This document shows positions 5,301 through 48,500 of a stretch of DNA of 64,000 nucleotides, one piece after another. Made by a program: the position numbers and the translations under genes. Where the stretch lies: the NCBI GenBank assembly GCA_010909165.1, contig VJWM01000144.1, positions 310,001 through 374,000 on the forward strand. Reading direction: 5' to 3'. Position 1 is the stretch's first letter; the number at the start of each line of letters is the position of its first letter. Origin of the DNA: Anthoceros angustus (lineage: Eukaryota > Plantae > Anthocerotophyta). The notes under the pieces are model-generated. The model saw only the letters and a program-made list of their open reading frames with translations, ran no database searches and had not been told where the DNA came from.

Positions 5301-8300
5301 GTCTCATCCACGTGTTCGATTCTTTTTATTTTCAGGTCTTACCGTTGCCACCCCTTATTCAACATGAAAGCGGACCACAATACATTATCGAACCGAATTT
5401 TTCTTGCACTATGTGGAGCATGCCACAAGTTCAAAGTTGGTCAAGTTCATTTGTTTTAGTTAGTTCATGTAGTTTAAAATGTGTATAACAATGCACCAAC
5501 AATGTGGTCTTCCAGTGAAATTCAATATGTTGACAAGGTTCGAATTTCTTTGTTTGTTTGTTGTTTTTTCATTTGGGGTCCTTCTAATTGTGTGCTTGTT
5601 GGCGATTCGAATCCACCACCGGTGTGAGCAGCGACACTTCCACGTTTCAACATTGAAGAAGCTCGATGGTCAGTGGATTGATGGCCCTTAGTTGGAGGGC
5701 ATTGCCTCAAGTGATTGTTATCGACATCCAAGTTCGTGAGGACAGCGTGGTTGCATTGCCACCTTTGGACATGGTATTGCAGTTGAGAATGCGATGTAAA
5801 TGCAAGGCTTTTATGAAAGTGAGTGGTGTGAGGGGTTGGGACAATGCTGTTGAGGATATTCGCATAAGGATCTAAACCTAATTCTAATACCTTTTTCCAT
5901 CAAGTGCGAAACACGAAGACAACTCGAGATTTTCTCCGAAACATAAGTTCTTTGTGAGTTCTTGTGTTTTCTCGTGAGAGAAACATGAGTTCTTGTGTTT
6001 TCACCGCTTTAAGTTTATCTCGACTATGACTTTACCTTGTGCGGTGATGTCTTTCTTCCGGGTTTCAACCGAATTTTAACAAGGAAGTGCATTGGACCGA
6101 GCCGGCTCGACATTCTGTGATAAACATGCTTCACGGATTTTCCATGGGGCCCAGCTCTTGTTGCATCCATGAAAATCGCAAGGACCTCGGATTGTGTCAT
6201 GTCGAAAGGATGTTAAGTTGATTTCGGATGATGATGAGCGAATCCTTGCCCATAGAGATCATCAATGTTAATTTGGTCGTGGGGCTCAAAAAGGTACTTT
6301 TGTTCTTTGTGGTTTGCGATCCTAGGCTACCTCAAATTCTAATGCCTAAATTGTATTGCGGTGTGCGTATTTTTGCATGAACAGTTTGGAGTCCGAGGCG
6401 GGAAGAGTTACATAATCTTCTTATCGTGGACTTCTCATTTTCATCAAATTCGGACAATTTCTTCCAAGTCCTCAAGGTCATCAATTTCTTTGTTTTGTGG
6501 TCCTTGTTTCATTTGGTGTGTCTTTTGTTTCATTTGGTGTGTGTCTTTTGTTTCGATATGAAGAACGGCTTTCAAAGAATTACAAAGTTGACATGAAGAA
6601 TTACCAAAGTGAGCACTTCCGCCAAAGGTCAAAAACTATGAGAAGGACGTTATTGAAACTTTCAAAGTCATATTGATCACTCTCCTAAGTGGATTGCAAA
6701 CGACAAGAATCATCAATACGGGGTTTCTTTTCAACTCAACCATTGATAACCCAAGATCAAATGTAAGTTTGTGATTAATTGCTTTGAGCTATTGTGGTTT
6801 TGAATGTACTAACTATTAGTTCTATTAGCTAGGTGTGGTATGCAAAACTTCGAGTATCGAAAGGAATCTTGTCGAGGTCCATGAAGACTATGGTCCTTGT
6901 TGGCCATTACACCAACAAGAGTTGTCGTAACAATGATTACACATTTGACGATGGCCTGTGTGCCTTCGATCTTTGGGAGAAGTGTCACCGCCATAAAAGA
7001 TGCTGGATTTTCAAGGTAAGTATGGTAGCAATTGTGACATTTAAAATTATTTGTATTTTCTTTTCCGACGTTATGATGTTTTTCGATATGATCGACCGGT
7101 CAAGCAAAACAGTAATCGCAGCAAGAGTTCTTGTTCGTGAACGAAGATCTTACAAGGAGCTCGATCAAGAACTCAATCGGATGCGTGATGATCCGAGGGT
7201 GTTCTTCCGTCAAGCATCACGGATGTGAGTCCGTAATATTTTCGAGTCACCAAGATCGTCCTTTGCAAGCGCAACGAAATGAGAATGTAAGCTTGAGATG
7301 TATAGTAAGTATATGTGGACCGTCTCATCCACGTGTTCGATTCTTTTTATTTTCAGGTCTTACCGTTGCCACCCTTATTCAACATGAAAGCGGACCACAA
7401 TACATTATCGAACCGAATTTTTCTTGCACTATGTGGAGCATGCCACAAGTTCAAAGTTGGTCAAGTTCATTTGTTTTAGTTAGTTCATGTAGTTTAAAAT
7501 GTGTATAACAATGCACCAACAATGTGGTCTTCCAGTGAAAATTCAATATGTTGACAAGGTTCGAATTTGTCGTTTGTTTGTTGTTTTTTCATTTGGGGTC
7601 CTTCTAATTGTGTGCTTGTTGGCGATTCGAATCCACCACCGGTGTGAGCAGCGACACTTCCACGTTTCAACATTGAAGAAGCTCGATGGTCAGTGGATTG
7701 ATGGCCCTTAGTTGGAGGGCATTGCCTCAAGTGATTGTTATCGACATCCAAGTTCGTGAGGACAGCGTGGTTGCATTGCCACCTTTGGACATGGTATTGC
7801 AGTTGAGAATGCGATGTAAATGCAAGCTTTGAGCTATTGTGGTTTTGAATGTACTAACTATTAGTTCTATTAGCTAGGTGTGGTATGCAAAACTTCGAGT
7901 ATCGAAAGGAATGTCGAAGGTCCATGAAGACTATGGCCGAAGCCGCCTTGTTGGCCATTACACCAACAAGAGTTGTCGTAACAATGATTACACATTTGAC
8001 GATGGCCTGTGTGCCTTCGATCTTTGGGAGAAGTGTCACCGCCATAAAAGATGCTGGATTTTCAAGGTAAGTATGGTAGCAATTGTGACATTTAAAATTA
8101 TTTGTATTTTCTTTTCTCGACGTTATGATGTTTTTCGGATATGATCGACCGGTCAAGCAAAACAGTAATCGCAGCAAGAGTTCTTGTTCTCGGTGAACGA
8201 AGATCTTACAAGGAGCTCGATCAAGAACTCAATCGGATGCGTGATGATCCGAGGGTGTTCTTCCAAGCCCGGATGTGAGTCCGTAATATTTTCGAGTCAC

Positions 8301-35814: not shown

Positions 35815-37140
35815 ATGGGAGAAGTGACGCATCGATTTGTGGATGCCAACGGCCTGAAAATTCACATCGCGGAGCAGGGATCGGGTCAGTTTGGAATGCG
35901 GGAGAATCCGCGCAGAATTTGTGGCTGGATGAAAATTTTTAGCCTTGATTTCAGAATTCAATGGAATTGCAGGGCCTGTCGTCCTGCTGCTGCATGGATA
36001 TCCTGAGAGCTGGTACTCTTGGCGGCATCAGCTGCCGGCTCTGGCAGCCGCGGGTTTCCACGCTGTGGCTCCCGACCTCCGAGGCTATGGTGACACCAAG
36101 GGCCCGGAGTCTCCAGAGGAATACACGGCGCTGCACCTAGTGGGAGACTTCATCGGCCTGCTTGATGCACTCGGGGCGAAGCAGGTCTGCTCCGAGTCCG
36201 CTCCATGGTTAGCTGGTTTGGAAGGGGCTTTGAGAGTTCTGAGTGTGGCTGAGGGAGCTGTGTGTGGCAGGCGTTCGTGGCGGGACACGACTTCGGAGCT
36301 ATCCATGCCTGGGATCTGTGCTTGCTGCGGCCGGATCGTGTGAAAGCGGCTGTAATACTGAGTGTGCCTTTTCTGCCTCGCCTTCCCATCGGGAGCGTGT
36401 TGACACAGTTACGTCAGGCTATAGGAGAGGGATTCTACATGGCGCGGTATCAGGTATGACGACAAGATGAGGAACGGCAGCTGAGATGCCATTGTCCCGT
36501 CCGTGGTTGACGGTTCTTGAGGTGGTGCACTGGCAGAAGAAGGGAGTGGCGGAGGCTTTGTATGAGAAGACCGGATATGAGCATGTTCTCAAGGCACTGA
36601 TTCTCGGCGAAACACCTTTCAAGAATGAGGACAAGCCAGAGGAGGAGGACTTCACACCTGACCCTCCCGAGGCATTTCCGCCGTGGTTTACAGAGCAGGA
36701 TTTGGCTCACTTCGTAGACACGTTCAAGAAGTCAGGATTCACCACTCCCTTGAACCATTACCGTGCGCTTGACAGGTGCAGTTGTTTTTTCTTCACGACC
36801 AGTGCGTTGCAGTATGGGTTGCTTCTTCCAAATATCATAACCACGTGCATATGGTTGGCATCACACTTGTTTCTGCATGCACAGGTCATGGGAGCTGAAA
36901 GCTGCCTGGAGTGAGACCGGCATCCCAGACACTCCTGCTTTGTTCATCATCGGTAAGAAGGATCTGGTGTACAATTTCCCTGGAATAAAGGAATATCTGC
37001 ACGGAGGAGGGTTCAAAGGGCTCGTCCCAAAGCTGAAGGAGTCTATACTCGTCGAAGGTGCCAATCACTTCATACAACAGGAACGGCCCGAACTTGTGTC
37101 GGCCGAGATCGTTAAATTCTTCAAGGAGCACAATGGCTGA
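35815..37140 (+). CDS. Alpha/beta-fold epoxide hydrolase (copy 4), inverted duplicate of copy 1
   Basis: Same motifs as copy 1 (HGYP, GHDFG, LNHYR, GANHFIQQE). Flanks mirror 27310-29170. Confidence 0.92.
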
Positions 37141-39053: not shown

Positions 39054-41346
39054 CTACTTCGACCTCTTGTAGATCTTCCCGAGAAATTTATTAAGCACTC
39101 CCTGCAGGAAACACTGTTAATATACCGTGCACTATATACATCAATGAGGTAAGCCTACCGGTCAACACGGGCTTACTTGAATAGTAGCACTTTCCTGCTG
39201 CCCTATAGCAGCGGTCAGCTTCTCGTAGCTCTCTTGCTCATAGTCCGCGTACACTTTCTGGACGGCATTAGTCGTGGAATCAATACAGGGGAGAGGCTTC
39301 CTCTAAGCAGAGGTGGAGGAGGGTTGTGATGATCAGGGCAAAGGCCCTGGACGACGGGTCCACAGTGCAGGCAAACAGAAATATACCTGCAAATCCAGCT
39401 CGTTGTAGACTTTCTTGATCTCTGCTACCTTGGCAGCATCATGTTTCCCGTAGTTTTTCTGAGATCAGATAGAATGGCTATGAAAATCAAGTTACAAATA
39501 AGGTCCTCAAGATCAACAGCAAGTGGAGTAGAGTACCTCAATCCTTTGCTTCTGTTCGTCATCCGCTCGCTGCAGAGCTTGAACTACCAACCAAGAACAT
39601 TTTGTGTCTTCAATGTCCGTACCAACCTGTTCAGTACACCAATAAGAATATCCTCCAGTGACAACCCGAAAAGGTACAGCAACCAATTACACTCCACACA
39701 TAGGACTGCTTTGTATAACCTCAATACCAACCTTTCCAATAAATTGAGGATCGCCATAGCAGTCCAGAAAATCATCCTGTTACCATATTCACTCATCAGT
39801 TGAGAGGTGAAGACAGAGTCCTACCCAACCATATCAACAGTCTCAGCTGTTATGCTCTGTTCTGGAAACGTAGACATACCTGCACTTGAAAATAGGTGCC
39901 CATCTGTACAAGAATATCCTTCACTGATTCATGCTTGCCCAAGCTTTCTCCAGCCAGCAGCAGAGCACATGCAACCTACGAAACCCACAGGACTGTTGGA
40001 CTAAGGAAAGTACAACCAGCTCAGATCCAAGTGAAGTCATTCGGGGCTTACAGGAAGATAGAATGAATAATAGGCAGTTTTGAACTGAACAATGCGGATG
40101 TATCTGCAAAAAACAATTATGAATCAAGCTCCAGATTGGTCCCATCACCAAGACCGAGTGTAAAATTTTTACAGTTTCAGACATTTTGAAAAGCATATTA
40201 CGTTGGGAGAATATATTTGGACAAGTCAACCTCCCCAGCAGGGGTGGTGATCAAATCAAGCATTTGACCTGAAGACGTTTGATACTCCACCTGGAAAAGG
40301 ACAGAGGAGCCAGACCATTCCGTCACGCAAGATTCCTAACACAAACCCATGGACAATGGGAAGGAGATGGGCTGGTTATTAGATCACATACTTCATTGAA
40401 GAGCTCCACGAGGTCAACATATACAGGATGGTCCCGAAAGTACGTGGTTAAAATTATAAAAATGTGGTTCCGCAAAAGGATCCCATCGTTTATGGCTATA
40501 GAACCCACCTACGAGACATCAAGACCCCAATTCAGCTCTGGTGAAAGAAACGAACACAGGCTTAGGCACAAGGGACTTGCAAATCCTAGTGAGAGGGTGA
40601 TGTACCCGTCTGCATCCTCACCTTCGGGACACGGAACCAGCAAGGCTGTCCTCGACGGGTCACTGAGCTGTCCATGATATCGTCAAGCACAAGAAAATAT
40701 GCCTGAAGCTGCGTGACCGACAAACATGGTCCAGCCTGGGGTAAGAACCAGACAATAACAGCAACACCTCTGAGCATTTACACAGGTGAGATAGAGGAGT
40801 ATCTTACCCACTCAATGCACCATCCAAGAGCGCATGCGAGAAAGACCTCTTGCTCAGACAGCTCTTCGCTTTTTAATTGCCTCAAACTGTCAATCACAGA
40901 CAGTCCCCTATTCAGCTTCCCTGCAATCACAGACGTCAAATGAGGACCCAAACGACACAACACCTTCTGAGAAAGACCAAGACTCTCTGAACAAGAAATG
41001 TGCACATGCCATCCACCACACGGTCGCAAGCTTACCTCCAGGCACATTGTAGTCGAGCATCTGCCCGGGAAAGAAACAAAATGTCAGTGTACACTCCCAC
41101 ATCCGGACAGAAGCGCGAATCACGGAGCTCAGGCATTGGCATCACCTCTTCAACCCAAGCTCGTGACTCGGCCGTGTAAGAGAAAGCCTTGGAATCCGCC
41201 AACAGCAGGCTCTTCAAGGTGTCATAAACAGCCAAAAACGTGGATCTGTCTCCAGCTCCCTGGCTCTTGACGGCATCACCTTTGCCCTCAGATTTCCCAT
41301 TGCTCACAACCTCCTCAGCCACGGGGCCGGCAGCACTCGACGGCAT
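39054..41346 (-). CDS. FPS: Farnesyl diphosphate synthase
   Basis: [38 protein letters not shown] (first Asp-rich motif), GQMLDL, GTYFQVQ|DDFLDC (second Asp-rich motif), ends LGKIYKRSK*. About 12 exons with GT-AG introns. Confidence 0.95.
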
Positions 41347-41796
41347 CGTCCTCAACACAAGGCAAGACGGCCTGAAAAAATGAACACGACTCAAAACATG
41401 CAATCTCCGTAGCTGCATCCCAAGAACTACTACTCAAACCCTCGATCCCAATGCTCCGGTCTTGCTACCAGACACGCATGAAAACGCTTCAATCCTGCAC
41501 TAGTTGTTACCACGAATTCAGATCTGAGAACAGAACAGCACCACGGAAACAGACGCGGCCTTCCAAAGCACTCTTCACGCTCCGTTCGGCCGTCAGAGAA
41601 GCCGGGACTCGAGAATCAATGCAAGGTGGGGCATAGATCTGTCCCCCGGCTTTCCTGGGAAGCGAGGCCTTCAGCAAGGCGGGACCTTTTTCTGCTTCGG
41701 CCTGGCTCCTCGGAGTCCCGACAAGGGCTTTTTTTCCTTTTCATTTTTTCTCTCCTAAAGAGCCGCAAACATTGTTGAACATGCAGCATCAGAGGG

Positions 41797-41915
41797 ATGA
41801 AACGCGATTCTGTCGCCAATCTGCAAACAGATAACAGACCTGACAGCAACATACAACAGTAGAGGAATGAAACGCGATTCTTGGTAATCTGCAAACAGAT
41901 AACAGACCTGATAAC
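41797..41915. repeat. Short duplication in the divergent FPS / pyrophosphatase intergenic region
   Basis: atgaaacgcgattct..aatctgcaaacagataacagacctga occurs twice. Confidence 0.75.
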
Positions 41916-42023
41916 AGTCGTTCATTGGAGCAGAGCTTGGGACTCGAGCTTGGCTCTCTGAAGGCGAAGAGAAGGAGGGGACGAGGGAGCAGAATTCAGA
42001 GACGAGCTTGGCGAGGAGCAGCG

Positions 42024-43703
42024 ATGGCGGTGGCTGGGGTGCGGACTGCCGTGCCCTACTGCGCGCCGGCCACCGCGCGGGTGGTATCCCGGAAGATCGA
42101 GGTGTGCGCTGTTCCTGCGGGCCTGCGCGCCTGCCTCGGGGCATGGAGGGGCCAGGCGGTCCGGCAGCAGCGCAGGCCTGCTCCGGCCAGCGGTTCCAGG
42201 CGGGGCCTCCATTTGCTGCGAGCGCTGCAGCGGCCGGACTACGCGGTGCGGGAGGAAGGGCAGCCGGAGACTCTGGACTACCGCGTCTTCTTCTCTGACA
42301 AGTCGGGGAAGACTGTGAGTAATGCTGGAAGTGTGCATATCTGGCCTGCATTGGTTTCCGAGCTGAGTGAGGCGGGCGGGAGAGTGCATTTTTTTTGCGG
42401 TGCTGTGAGGGGATTTTGTGTGAAGAATTTGGAATCGTTGACGGTGTTCCGTGGAATCATTTTTGCGTTTGCAATGGTGAAGTGAGGGAGTGTGTTTCTT
42501 CGTTCTGGATTGGAGTTGAGTGATGGATGTTAGGAGATTATGAATCGGTTGTTGTTGACAATTCTCTCGTCTGTCAGATTTCCCCTTGGCATGACATCCC
42601 GCTCCATGCTGGAAATGGCCTGTTTAACTTCGTCGTGGAGATTCCGAAGGAAACCAAGGCTAAAATGGAGGTGGCAACTGATGAGACTCACAATCCAATC
42701 AAACAGGATACCAAGAAGGGCAAGCTGCGCTACTATCCGTATGTGCTGTCTATGGTACTCCTCATTCGATGTCTTGGTGGTGTGTAACAGGTTGAATCGT
42801 TTACGACGTCCCAGACTGGGGGAGGAATTGACTCTTCGGTGGAAATCTCAGGTACAACATAAATTGGAATTATGGATTGCTGCCTCAAACTTGGGAGGAT
42901 CCAGAACACTCAAACAAGGAGGTCGAAGGAGCATTTGGTGACAATGATCCAGGTTCGTCCGCACGCTTTGACAAGTTGTCACAAACAGTCTGGTGAGGTG
43001 AAGGGGCAGGCTTCAGGCTTTAGCCGAAATTGAGGTGAAATTGTCTGTTTCTTTCAACATCAGGTGCTCAAGGCCGAGTGTTTGTGTTCTGGTGCAGTGG
43101 ATGTTGTGGAGATCGGGGAGAGACAAGCAAATATTGGGGATGTGGTAAAGGTCAAACCCTTAGCAGTTTTAGCCATGATTGATGAAGGCGAGCTGGACTG
43201 GAAGGTGGTGGCCATTTCTGTGGACGACCCAAAGGCGTATCTAGTCAACGATGTAGAGAGCGTTGAGAAGCACTTTCCGGTATTTATCAAGTTTTGTCTC
43301 TGAATGCAGCTTAGGCTGGGAGTAAGATATTGAGGAGTTTCTCAGCCTGGTCTGTTATTTGATGTGCCCTTCTCATCAGGGAACGTTGACCGCCATTCGA
43401 GACTGGTTCAGGGACTACAAGATCCCTGATGGAAAACCTGCCAACAAGTTCGGACTTGGAAACAAGCCGGCTGATAAAGTATGTCCATCGGCATGACATA
43501 AATCTGGGACAAGGTCTGGCCCTGTGGCCGCGTGTGAGACTTTTCACTAATGGAGGTTGAGTTTTTCCTTGTTCCAGGACTATGCATTGAATGTGATTGC
43601 TGAGACGAACCAGGCTTGGGCAAAACTAGCGAAGAAATCAGCAGGTGCAGATGGCCTTAAGCCAAGAATTTTGAAATTCTTGTTCTCCGGATTTAATGTC
43701 TGA
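42024..43703 (+). CDS. PPA6: Plastid soluble inorganic pyrophosphatase (family I, PPa6-type)
   Basis: Exons 42024-42314, 42578-42738, 42852-42952, 43098-43279, 43380-43478, 43578-43703. Arg/Ala-rich transit peptide; [55 protein letters not shown]. Confidence 0.93.
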
Positions 43704-43758
43704 CAATTATCTGATTCTGAAGATGCTGACAGTATATTCGTGACATGTATGTTTACAG

Positions 43759-45300
43759 CGGCAGCAGTCGCTCCTGAGTCTCTTCAGGCAGATACGTCAG
43801 AGCCTCTTCTGTTGCGAGCAGTCCGTGGAGAAATTGTGGATAGGCCTCCCGTCTGGTTGATGAGACAGGCTGGTAGATATATGAAGGTACGTTTCAAGAG
43901 CACCATTTCGGTTTCGGGGCCAGCTCCTGCTAGCTGGCCTTTTGGAAGAGTGTGGGGTGGCTATTTTCAAAGAGCACTGAGTTCGAAATACGTCTCTTCG
44001 GTCTGCAGGTTTATCAGCAACTATGCGAAAAGTATCCAACCTTTAGGGAGAGATCAGAGAATGTGGATGTGGCTGTGGAAGTGTCCCTGCAACCGTGGAG
44101 AGCGTTCAAGCCAGATGGAGTGAGTGTGCTTGCCGGTTGTATCATGTGGCATGTGGCATGTGGCATGTGGCATGTGGCATGTGGCATGTGGCATGTGGCA
44201 TGTGGCATGTGGCACGCATGTGGCATGAGGCATGAGGTTCACAATGCGTTGCTTCTTGATTTGGGTGCGCAGGTAATTCTCTTCTCGGACATCTTGACAC
44301 CTTTGACAGGGATGAATATACCATTCGATATTTTGAAGAGCAAAGGGCCAGTTATCCACAAGCCGATTCGGACTGCAGCAGACGTTGCTGAAGTTCGAGA
44401 GCTCGTCCCAGAAGAAGCTGTACCTTATGTTGGGGAGGCACTGGCGGCCTTACGTTCAGAGGTATGTCCTGTAGCACGTCGGCTCTTTCAGGGGAGTTTA
44501 GGGTAACCCGGCAGGTGTGCTGCGAAGGTGAATAGTGTCAGTTTTCCTTTGAGCAGATTTGACATTTTCATTTCGTTCAGGTTGGAAATGCGTCCACGGT
44601 ATTGGGCTTCGTTGGTGCTCCTTTCACTCTGGCATCGTATATTGTGGAGGGCGGATCATCCAAGCACTTTACAGTCATAAAAAGACTGGCATTTGAGACG
44701 CCCGAGGTACCTAGTCACCTTTTCATACAGACCTTGCTTATCTAATTTCAAGAGTATTCTGTGTTTAATAGCCGTTGTGTGCAGATTCTGCATTCATTGT
44801 TGCGGAAGCTAGCAGAGTCGGTGATAATCTACACGAGGTACCAAGCAGACAAAGGCGCACAGGCTGTCCAGATTTTTGACTCGTGGGCAACTCATCTTAG
44901 CCCCAAGGATTTTGAGGTTTTCAGCCTTCCATACATCAAGCAGATAGTGAGAGAAGTGAAGGCCACTCATCCTCACCTCCCTCTCATTCTGTACGCAAGT
45001 GGCAGCGGAGGGTTACTGGAGAGAATGGCTACGGCAGACGTAGATGTCATTAGTCTGGACTGGACAGTAGACATGGCGGAAGCCAGGCAGAGGGTAGGAA
45101 CGGATCGCGCAGTGCAGGGCAACATAGATCCAGGAGTCCTGTTCGGAACAAAGGACTTCATCTCTCAGCGGATCCATGAAACTGTAGCTCAAGCGGGGTC
45201 TCGGAAACACATCCTCAACCTTGGACATGGGGTGCTGTTGGGCACGCCGGAGGAGAGCGTCGCTCACTTTTTTGAGGTGGCTAAGAGTCTCAGGTACTAG
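43759..45300 (+). CDS. hemE: Uroporphyrinogen III decarboxylase (plastid HEME2-type), lacking its own transit-peptide exon
   Basis: Exons 43759-43886, 44009-44119, 44273-44461, 44581-44706, 44785-45300. [47 protein letters not shown]. Confidence 0.95.
44143..44235. repeat. (TGGCATG)n 7-bp microsatellite in a UROD intron
   Basis: About 12 units. Confidence 0.95.
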
Positions 45301-45489
45301 TCTCTACTCTAGTGGTATACTAGTTCCTTTTTCGGTGAAAAGATAATAGAAAATGTTCCACGAGCTCTAGTGAGTGTTAGCTACCATATTTCTTGCGGCT
45401 AGACTTCGACAAGTTGATGATAACCCAATGAACTATTATTTATTTATTCACAATGTTAAGGTGATACATAGAGAAAGCGCGCAGAGAAC

Positions 45490-46060
45490 ATACCCACATT
45501 GGCTGAGGAAAGCTCGTAGACCAGACCCACATTGGCTGAGGAAAGCTCCCAGAACAGACCCACATTGGCCGAGACCCACATTGGCTGAGGAAAGCTCGCA
45601 GAACAGACCCACATTGGCCGAGGAAAGCTCTGTTCTCATTGGCTGAGGAAAGCTCGCAAAACAGACCCACATTGGCTGAGGAAAGCTCGCAGTAATGCAC
45701 TCCACATTGGCCGAGGAAAGCTCTGCTCATTGGCTGAGGAAAGCTCGCAAAACAGACCCACATTGGCTGAGGAAAGCTCGCAGAACAGACCCACATTGGC
45801 CGAGGAGAGCTCGCAGAACAGACCCACATTGGCCGAGGAAAGCTCTGTTCTCATTGGCTGAGGAAAGCTCGCAAAACAGACCCACATTGGCTGAGGAAAG
45901 CTCGTAGAACAAACTCACATTGGCTGAGGAAAGCTTGCAGAACAAACCCACATTGGCTGAGGAAAACTCGCAGAACAGACCCACATTGGTTGAGGAAAGC
46001 TCACAAAACAGACCCACATTGGCTGAGGAGAGCTCGTAGAATATACCCATATTCGCTAAG
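45490..46060. repeat. 33-bp minisatellite (cccacattggctgaggaaagctcgcagaacaga)n
   Basis: Many imperfect units, some truncated. Confidence 0.92.
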
Positions 46061-46574
46061 GAACTAACAAAGATTGCCTCCTCAATTTTGTCATTTTGTT
46101 GTCCTCGCCTGCAGGCTTCTTGCATGTGTTGTTTCAATCTGCAAATGCTGAAAATCTGCAGTGCAAATGCTGAAAATATGTAGTATGTTGGAGTGTGACG
46201 GAGTTTTGCTAAAAGTGATGCTAAATCTAGATTACATATATTGAAAATAAACGAGTAAGATAAGTAAGACAAGAGCTTATGGCATTGAAAACAACACAAA
46301 AGTGAGCACTAGACGAGATACATAGAGTGTAACTTTAGGAGACTCTTAGGGGTTTTAATATCTCCAAGGAATGTTTCTTTTTCGTCATATTTTAGGGTGC
46401 ACTTTTTAGTTGCATGAAGAGGTCTAGTTTATGGGGGGATGATGTGAGAATAAAGTATTTGGGATGATTGTTGTAGTCATATAAAACCATATACTTGGAT
46501 TACTGGTGTAGCCACATATACTGGGATTATTGGTGTAGTCACATAATACTACTCATAGAGTACTATTCTATATT

Positions 46575-48192: not shown

Positions 48193-48384
48193 CTATTCTA
48201 TATTAGGCTCCTAATTAGTACAATGTGCTGCCCTCTAAAAAGCCCTTAAGGGCTACACTTCAAAAAATTTGGTCTTGTTCTCATGTGTGCACCTTGTATG
48301 TTATTTTTCTACTATAAACGTGCTTCTCTTACTCATTTATTTCCAACATCAACATCTTTCAACATTTTTTATGGTGGTCAATGG

Positions 48385-48500
48385 GGCGGGATACAGGCGA
48401 GGCTTGGATGTGTTGCTAGAGTACTTGGTACTAGGGGAAGGGAAGCCAAAAACTTTAGGCTACCGTATCTTTGTTTGTGACAAGTCGGGGCAGATTGTAA
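48385..48500 (+). pseudogene. Degenerate copy of pyrophosphatase exon 1
   Basis: EYLVLGEGKPKTLGYRIFVCDKSGQI|gtaag versus [26 protein letters not shown]|gtgag at 42237-42319. Confidence 0.7.

What the first reader, a model, noticed from the sequence alone, without database searches (positions are those of the whole stretch)
42024..45300. Predicted in-frame pyrophosphatase-uroporphyrinogen decarboxylase fusion via a 114-nt intron, with intron retention giving stand-alone PPase
Seen: UROD begins at an acceptor (tttacAG|cg, 43758/9) only 55 nt after the PPase read-through stop, leaving no room for its own promoter or plastid transit-peptide exon. A donor G|GTGCAG after 43644 is phase 1, like that acceptor. 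A branch-like gctgac lies near 43725. Splicing 43645-43758 gives ..[30 protein letters not shown].., a 1971-nt CDS (656 aa). The same GTGCAG donor is apparently used in the epoxide hydrolase at ~36776. Known: plant UROD is plastid-localised and needs a transit peptide, and glutamyl-tRNA formation at the start of C5 tetrapyrrole synthesis releases PPi. Inference: one transit peptide imports a bifunctional PPase-UROD, and alternative splicing switches between PPase alone and the fusion. I am not aware of such a fusion being described.
Basis: partly seen in the sequence, partly recalled or inferred. Interest (0 to 1): 0.88.

Follow-up and report, generated by a model that had tools for sequence, protein, structure and literature searches.

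The report
Hornwort pyrophosphatase–porphyrin enzyme fusion gene
In this plant (probably a hornwort), a chlorophyll/haem-pathway enzyme has lost its own start and chloroplast address label and sits, joinable in frame by one intron, behind the chloroplast pyrophosphatase. The two are most likely made as one protein, a pairing not found in other plants or in the papers searched, but no RNA read of the join could be checked.

Summary
Eleven GT-AG exons (42024-45300) give one intact 656-aa ORF: transit-peptide-like leader, plastid soluble pyrophosphatase (PPa6 type), then HEME2-type uroporphyrinogen decarboxylase (UROD).

The 114-nt joining intron is a hybrid. Its acceptor is HEME2's ancestral phase-1 intron-1 acceptor (as in moss, Selaginella, Closterium). 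Its donor is new and lies inside what is PPa6's uninterrupted last exon elsewhere. UROD's own transit-peptide exon and PPa6's conserved 'SLx-stop' end are both missing, yet both domains keep all catalytic motifs under purifying selection. The same CAG|GTGCAG donor is required in the neighbouring epoxide hydrolase.

All other plant and algal HEME2 proteins found are stand-alone and not next to PPa6. No PPase-UROD fusion turned up in databases or papers, and no hornwort relative was available for comparison.

The proposed retention switch is untested: the read-through keeps a trace of the old tail but loses its end. A metabolic rationale is weak; capture of a transit peptide is likelier. The scan noted a similar case (PSA2) elsewhere in this genome.

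The parts
42024..42314 (+). Exon 1: ATG, transit-peptide-like leader (about residues 1-65) and start of mature PPase
   Evidence: First 60 aa have 1 acidic and 11 basic residues and score 0.30 on a HEME2 transit-peptide composition scale (22 reference leaders: 0.36 +/- 0.11). Composition only; not a localisation test.
42578..42738 (+). PPase exon 2 (KMEV, KLRYY catalytic motifs)
42852..42952 (+). PPase exon 3 (NYG, DNDPVD metal-binding motif)
   Evidence: PF00719 hit
43098..43279 (+). PPase exon 4 (DEGELDWK motif)
   Evidence: PF00719 E 6e-15; yeast PPase structures E 1e-16; 75-87% identity to plant PPa6 loci
43380..43478 (+). PPase exon 5 (RDYKIP motif)
43578..43644 (+). PPase exon 6: truncated ancestral last exon, ending after the final helix
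   Evidence: Outgroup last exons run on without an intron to an ELSLx-stop; last helix ends here in the model of an outgroup PPa6
43645..43758 (+). Fusion intron (114 nt, phase 1): new donor inside the old PPase last exon, ancestral HEME2 intron-1 acceptor
   Evidence: splicing inferred, not seen in reads
43644..43658 (+). Remnant of the ancestral PPase tail in read-through frame (five codons, with the otherwise invariant Leu in register)
   Evidence: p 0.016 against 3791 GT-started window stretches; last three columns score badly
43701..43703 (+). Read-through stop (319-aa PPase if the intron is retained)
43725..43730 (+). Branch-point-like site
43749..43751 (+). In-frame ATG inside the acceptor tract; would give a UROD with no leader
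43759..43886 (+). Exon 7 = ancestral HEME2 exon 2: 15-residue linker and UROD N-terminus (MRQAGRY)
   Evidence: PF01208 positions 2-31; 1J93; intron position -15, phase 1
44009..44119 (+). UROD exon 8
44273..44461 (+). UROD exon 9 (FSDIL)
44581..44706 (+). UROD exon 10 (catalytic Tyr motif)
44785..45300 (+). UROD exon 11 (IFDSW, NLGHG) and stop
   Evidence: PF01208 E 2e-58; tobacco UROD 1J93 E 2e-79

Best explanation
This is one chimeric nuclear gene, PPa6-HEME2. A rearrangement placed the HEME2 gene body, from inside its first intron, directly behind the plastid pyrophosphatase gene, removing HEME2's promoter and transit-peptide exon and the PPase 3' end (inferred). A donor inside the old PPase last exon, at a Gly codon of the conserved tail region, splices to HEME2's ancestral phase-1 acceptor (sites and phases shown, splicing inferred). 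The mRNA encodes a 656-aa precursor. The PPase leader imports it into the plastid (inferred from composition and family knowledge). A PPase domain then sits on a linker of about 18 residues at the N-terminus of UROD, both with intact catalytic motifs (shown). The most likely reason it persists is that UROD now depends on the PPase promoter and transit peptide. Both are stromal housekeeping enzymes, and UROD tolerates N-terminal partners. Substrate channelling is unlikely.
For: The ORF is intact and in phase. HEME2 intron 1 is phase 1 at -11 to -14 codons in Selaginella, Ceratodon, Closterium and two metagenome plant loci, against -15/phase 1 here, and the other four UROD introns are identical. 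Reference HEME2 leaders average 52 residues, so a promoter plus first exon cannot fit in the 55 nt after the read-through stop. Outgroup PPa6 last exons have no intron here and end in a conserved L-S-L-x-stop, which is lost. UROD is 77-86% identical to bryophyte, lycophyte and algal orthologues with dN 0.10-0.18 and saturated dS; the PPase is 82% identical with dN 0.11; all catalytic motifs are present; the UROD branch length is ordinary. UROD is therefore translated and needs a start and a leader. The identical donor 9-mer is required in a neighbouring gene. Run X1 (guessed RNA, same sample) holds 0.52 of the words, against 0.505 expected for all eleven spliced exons and 0.22 or 0.28 for either half alone. 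Natural N-terminal fusions to UROD exist (HemD-HemE: P0103, P0122).
Against: No junction read was seen. No hornwort relative was in any searchable collection, so conservation of the junction is untested. The donor is on the weak side (score -0.1 on a rough matrix from memory; true donors here range -1.7 to 6.3; 11% of exonic decoys reach it). The fused PPase domain loses the Leu that is invariant in the plant and algal PPase tail, which might weaken it. The X1 share cannot tell spliced (0.505) from retained (0.55), and shows only that both halves are present.
Confidence: 0.75

Rival explanations
1. Dual-product gene. Besides the fusion, intron-6 retention or polyadenylation inside it gives a functional 319-aa stand-alone plastid PPase, and the ratio sets PPase versus UROD dosage.
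For: The five codons after the donor still resemble the ancestral PPase tail and keep the invariant Leu in register (p 0.016), which a long-neutral intron should not. The donor is weak. Plastid PPase is important for starch, chlorophyll and carotenoid synthesis (PMC6018912). SODcp-RPL32 is a precedent for two transcripts (PMC8429499).
Against: The conserved S-L-x-stop end is replaced by an unrelated 13-residue extension (eight-codon test p 0.067). There is no poly(A)-like hexamer in the 55 nt after the stop. A retained transcript running through UROD would have a stop upstream of four introns, a likely NMD substrate (established knowledge). The trace is equally explained by a young fusion.
Confidence: 0.25
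2. Polyprotein. The spliced precursor is imported whole and then cut in the Ala-rich linker, releasing separate PPase and UROD, as recalled for PSRP7/EF-Ts and the Euglena plastid polyproteins.
For: The junction falls between the last PPase helix and the region where ancestral HEME2 leaders end in A-Q/S-A/V-V-A. The small-residue run after a basic pair resembles a stromal processing site (inference).
Against: The ancestral cleavage region lay mostly in the lost exon 1. No conserved spacer could be tested. The precedent is from memory, as the paper was not held.
Confidence: 0.2
3. Two separate genes. UROD has its own first exon further upstream (PPase nested in its intron 1), or starts at the ATG at 43749 without a leader, and the in-phase donor is chance.
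For: One open ATG-to-phase-1-donor stretch at 41451-41625 (58 codons, leader score 0.22, donor score -0.3) could splice to 43759. The ATG at 43749 is in frame.
Against: The 41451 candidate has four acidic residues and lies antisense over the inferred 5' exon and intron of the divergent prenyl-synthase gene. Similar scores arise by chance in alternative frames of PPase exon 2. This reading does not explain the loss of the PPase tail and stop. A leaderless HEME2 would be cytosolic, away from the plastid pathway (established knowledge).
Confidence: 0.1
4. Assembly artefact or a private deletion in the sequenced individual that removed the true PPase end and UROD exon 1.
For: No second genome or read set could be laid over the junction.
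Against: The join would have to fall by chance just after an in-phase donor and leave an intron-sized, intron-like stretch with a gradually decayed coding remnant. No repeat was noticed at the junction (not scanned with a repeat finder).
Confidence: 0.04

Closest known systems
SODcp-RPL32 chimeric gene of Malpighiales (Viola, Bruguiera, Populus; PMC8429499)
   Same: A plastid protein without its own leader is joined by splicing to an upstream plastid-enzyme gene and uses its transit peptide; two transcript types are possible.
   Different: There the downstream partner was newly transferred from the plastid into a SOD intron and carries only a SOD-derived N-terminus, and two transcripts are documented. 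Here both partners are ancient nuclear genes, HEME2 lost a leader it already had, both enzymes stay essentially complete, and a second transcript is not shown.
Plant HEME2 / UROD2 (PF01208; tobacco 1J93; Physcomitrium XP_024382580.1; Marchantia, Selaginella, Coleochaete orthologues)
   Same: 77-86% identity, same catalytic motifs, same intron positions.
   Different: All orthologues found are stand-alone (363-455 aa for the closest ones), with their own leader where complete, and none of five checked genomes has a PPase within 10 kb.
Plastid soluble inorganic pyrophosphatase PPa6 (family I, PF00719)
   Same: Same catalytic motifs, same five intron positions, transit-peptide-like leader.
   Different: The terminal [G/E]xL[S/W][L/I]x-stop is replaced by an intron and UROD; no outgroup locus has UROD nearby.
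Bacterial HemD-HemE fusions (P0103, P0122; PF02602 + PF01208)
   Same: A whole enzyme fused to the N-terminus of UROD, total 640-660 aa.
   Different: Those join consecutive steps of one pathway and have no introns. PPase shares no metabolite with UROD.
PSRP7/EF-Ts (PETs) plastid pro-protein (from memory; paper not held)
   Same: One nuclear gene and one leader for two plastid proteins.
   Different: It is processed after import and conserved from algae to angiosperms. Processing here is untested and the fusion appears lineage-restricted.

Membership tests
Plastid family I soluble PPase (PPa6) | PF00719 domain with the catalytic acidic, Lys, Arg and Tyr motifs | tested here: met
Plastid family I soluble PPase (PPa6) | Land-plant PPa6 intron pattern (five introns) | tested here: met
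   Exon blocks of L012/L013 break at the same residues
Plastid family I soluble PPase (PPa6) | N-terminal plastid transit peptide | tested here: inconclusive
   Composition within the range of reference leaders; no import test
Plastid family I soluble PPase (PPa6) | Stand-alone protein ending in the conserved LSLx-stop tail | tested here: not met
Plastid family I soluble PPase (PPa6) | Mg-dependent PPi hydrolysis; monomeric state | not testable with these tools
   needs an assay
Plant HEME2 uroporphyrinogen decarboxylase | Full URO-D domain with Arg, Asp, Tyr, Ser and His active-site motifs | tested here: met
Plant HEME2 uroporphyrinogen decarboxylase | Falls in the streptophyte HEME2 clade, not HEME1 | tested here: met
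   Clade support 100/99, though rooted on two long branches; intron positions match
Plant HEME2 uroporphyrinogen decarboxylase | Own promoter and transit-peptide exon | tested here: not met
Plant HEME2 uroporphyrinogen decarboxylase | Active homodimer in the plastid | not testable with these tools
   needs biochemistry
Shared-transit-peptide chimeric gene (SODcp-RPL32 type) | Downstream gene lacks a leader and is joinable in phase to an upstream plastid gene | tested here: met
Shared-transit-peptide chimeric gene (SODcp-RPL32 type) | Two alternatively spliced transcripts | not testable with these tools
Shared-transit-peptide chimeric gene (SODcp-RPL32 type) | Downstream partner recently transferred from an organelle | tested here: not met
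   HEME2 carries ancestral nuclear introns shared with Closterium
Plastid polyprotein (PETs type) | Cleavage into separate mature proteins after import | not testable with these tools
   needs immunoblot or N-terminomics

The most novel reading that the evidence does not exclude
A hornwort-lineage PPa6-HEME2 gene in which one splice or poly(A) choice at a hybrid intron sets the ratio of free plastid pyrophosphatase to a bifunctional PPase-UROD, tying tetrapyrrole capacity to PPi removal. It would be one of several cases in this compact genome where neighbouring plastid genes were merged under a single promoter and transit peptide.
Probability: 0.2. Interest if true: 0.75.

Novelty: new variant of a known kind. 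Interest (0 to 1): 0.55.

Why it matters
The PPase + UROD architecture was not found in about 5.8 billion clustered proteins as far as the searches reached, nor in the papers searched. It concerns a core chlorophyll/haem enzyme that is stand-alone in every other streptophyte sampled. The origin is unusually legible: an old acceptor, a new donor and a decaying coding tail. That makes it a clean test case for how one nuclear gene takes over another's promoter and transit peptide, and for whether a bystander enzyme can be carried on UROD without cost. In practice, annotation, knock-outs, tagging and proteomics of either gene in hornwort models would affect both. Together with the PSA2 case noted elsewhere in this genome (not checked here), it hints at repeated merging of plastid genes in hornworts.

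Tried and rejected
Those places were not sent to any search tool afterwards, and no read evidence was obtained.

The joined model was used only inside local scripts against already-fetched sequences.

Homolog searches: exon 11 alone and the representatives search gave no fusion and nothing above 77-85% identity. To widen the length window I aligned exon 11 with one long database protein. The first try was swamped by bacterial HemE. The second, padded with a Q/P-rich tail, returned full-length streptophyte HEME2s, none with PF00719. Both scored only 8000 candidates, so absence is not proven, and the PPase side was not searched in the protein collections.

Other searches: the metagenome scan with PPase exon 4 gave 34 loci, none with UROD and none that looks like a hornwort. 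The Atlas search was uninformative. Ten paper searches and the supplements of three hornwort papers held nothing on this locus. The papers on PETs, monomeric plastid PPase and PPase silencing were not held.

Ideas rejected: (1) that the donor is an ancestral last PPase intron, since outgroups have none there; (2) ancestral synteny of PPa6 and HEME2; (3) direct splicing of the leader exon to UROD, since exon 1 ends in phase 0 and it has no good phase-1 donor; (4) a pseudogenised UROD. The fold of an outgroup PPa6 left the role of its tail unresolved (pLDDT below 50).

Full report
Source. The window is about 49% GC with short introns. Earlier notes of the scan call the genome a probable hornwort. 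The UROD tree places the window's protein among streptophyte HEME2s but in none of the moss, liverwort, lycophyte, fern or seed-plant groups; its placement next to Coleochaete is weakly supported. The GC content matches the 49.6% reported for Anthoceros angustus (PMC7027989). The species is not established.

Observation. Eleven exons from 42024 to 45300, all with GT-AG introns, give 1971 nt and 656 aa with one terminal stop. Exons 3-4 hit PF00719, and exons 7-11 cover PF01208 from position 2 to 345 of 346. The nearest solved relatives are yeast PPase and tobacco UROD 1J93. The joining intron 43645-43758 is 114 nt and phase 1 at both ends, with GC 0.37 and a CTGAC 33 nt before the acceptor, within the range of the other introns here. 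Without splicing, the PPase frame stops at 43701, 55 nt before the acceptor. The donor 9-mer is modest on a rough matrix, but the identical 9-mer at 36776 is the only donor that keeps the neighbouring epoxide hydrolase in register with 2CJP.

What the UROD side shows. In Selaginella, Ceratodon, Closterium and two plant loci from metagenomes, HEME2 begins with a leader exon ending in a phase-1 intron 11-14 codons before the PLLLR motif. The Sphagnum annotation has a phase-1 intron at -28, and Marchantia lacks this intron. The window has a phase-1 acceptor at -15, and its other four UROD introns sit at +28, +65, +128 and +170, as in the outgroups. Exon 7 is therefore HEME2's ancestral exon 2, and the leader exon (reference leaders average 52 residues) is absent from the space available. 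A scan of 41300-43700 for substitute first exons found one candidate outside the PPase gene, 41451-41625. It has four acidic residues, lies antisense to the 5' region of the divergent prenyl-synthase gene, and scores no better than chance frames inside PPase exon 2. UROD is nonetheless under strong purifying selection (77-86% identity, dN 0.10-0.18, dS saturated, all active-site motifs present), so it is being translated.

What the PPase side shows. Plant PPa6 loci share the five upstream introns but have no intron in the last exon, which ends in P-A-G-E-L-S-L-x-stop. Green and other algae end at about the same place with an invariant Leu. The window's donor is therefore new and lies inside the old last exon, just after the final helix (model of an outgroup protein). 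In read-through the next five codons still resemble the old tail and keep the Leu in register (p 0.016 against GT-started stretches of the window). The last three residues and the stop are gone and a 13-residue unrelated extension follows (eight-codon p 0.067). The 5' end of the intron is thus a decaying coding tail and its 3' end is HEME2's intron 1: a hybrid intron, the mark of a rearrangement that joined two genes. No PPase lies within 10 kb of HEME2 in Marchantia, Sphagnum, Ceratodon, Selaginella or Closterium, and no UROD lies in any PPa6 locus fetched, so the adjacency is not ancestral synteny.

Expression. No reads could be laid. Those places were not sent to any search tool afterwards. 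The only indirect sign is run X1: guessed RNA, 30 million letters of contigs, same sample. It holds 0.52 of the sampled words. All eleven spliced exons predict 0.505, with intron 6 retained 0.55, and either half alone 0.22 or 0.28. Both halves are thus probably transcribed, but the junction itself is not shown. The joined search, a junction-pattern search and a fold of the fusion were left out; the joined sequence was used only in local scripts.

Distribution. Three homologue searches and one HMMER scan of 1.8 billion representatives returned no protein with both domains. The closest orthologues are stand-alone. No hornwort protein seems to be in these collections, two of the searches were capped at 8000 candidates, and only the UROD side was searched there. 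The fusion is therefore absent from the mosses, liverworts, lycophytes, ferns, seed plants and streptophyte algae sampled, and its range within hornworts is unknown. No paper in the library describes it.

Mechanism. Shown: sites, phases, intact frames, loss of the UROD leader exon and of the PPase end. Inferred: splicing of intron 6, import by the PPase leader, and a two-domain stromal enzyme. UROD accepts N-terminal partners in bacterial HemD-HemE fusions. The plastid PPase subfamily is described as monomeric (title cited in PMC6018912), so a dimeric UROD core with two appended PPase domains is plausible (inference). A metabolic reason is not needed and is weak. UROD neither makes nor uses PPi, and glutamyl-tRNA formation is several steps upstream (established knowledge). 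Silencing plastid PPase affects starch, chlorophyll and carotenoids alike. The simpler account is that HEME2 became dependent on the PPase promoter and leader once its own were lost. I put the chance that the spliced fusion mRNA exists at about 0.85, a functional PPase-only isoform at about 0.25, processing after import at about 0.2, independent genes at about 0.1 and an artefact at about 0.04; the middle two are compatible with the fusion.

Comparison and novelty. It works like the SODcp-RPL32 chimeras (PMC8429499) in sharing one leader through splicing. It is not a member of that group: the downstream partner is an ancient nuclear gene, both enzymes are complete, and two transcripts are not shown. 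Gene fusion with leader capture is a known kind of event; this domain pair and this route appear undescribed. I class it as a new variant of a known kind, with interest 0.55. It is surprising for a core tetrapyrrole enzyme and easy to test in a model hornwort, but it lacks junction reads and any sign of functional coupling. The scan's earlier notes record no PPase-UROD fusion but do record a similar start-less PSA2 and other fusions in this genome. I did not check those, and they are not counted as support. No contig taken for human was met.

Noticed in passing
window 40586-41700, minus strand: A polyprenyl (FPP-like) synthase gene (PF00348) lies head-to-head with the fusion gene, its likely first ATG about 680 nt from the PPase ATG. 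Such enzymes release PPi. With a putative 139-nt intron at 41372-41510, its frame stays open for about 84 codons upstream of that ATG with no other ATG: a possible non-AUG-started or 5'-extended targeting isoform.
   Followed up: partly
window 35815-37140, plus strand: Intact five-exon plant epoxide hydrolase (about 320 aa) that uses the same CAG|GTGCAG donor at 36776.
   Followed up: yes
window 41778-41916: An imperfect tandem duplication of about 70 nt (85-94% identical blocks) in the region between the two divergent genes.
   Followed up: no
window 45485-46063: A minisatellite of about 33-nt units (about 16-18 copies, with higher-order periods) starting 185 nt after the UROD stop; each unit holds the reverse complement of a CCAAT box.
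   Followed up: no
window 44141-44216: A short-period tandem repeat inside UROD intron 8 (seen); these places tripped the reads filter and were not sent to any search tool afterwards.
   Followed up: no
window 43732/43733 and 43722/43723: Two further AG sites in intron 6. Splicing to 43733 would end the PPase after three more codons; splicing to 43723 would stay in the UROD frame with 12 extra residues. Both are weak, unsupported alternatives worth checking in reads.
   Followed up: no
P0388 (Coleochaete scutata, EukProt): This HEME2 model carries an internal 50-residue duplication, probably a transcript-assembly artefact. Its segment before PLLLR is the closest match to the window's linker.
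   Followed up: no
L042 10001-12094 (Marchantia): Marchantia HEME2 lacks the phase-1 intron 1 seen in moss, Selaginella and Closterium; Ceratodon lacks the +170 intron and shares a +281 intron with Sphagnum.
   Followed up: no
window about 48380-48500: A weak match (45% over 44 aa, E 3e-6) to PPase residues 55-98 about 3 kb downstream of the gene; possibly a fragment of PPase exon 1.
   Followed up: no
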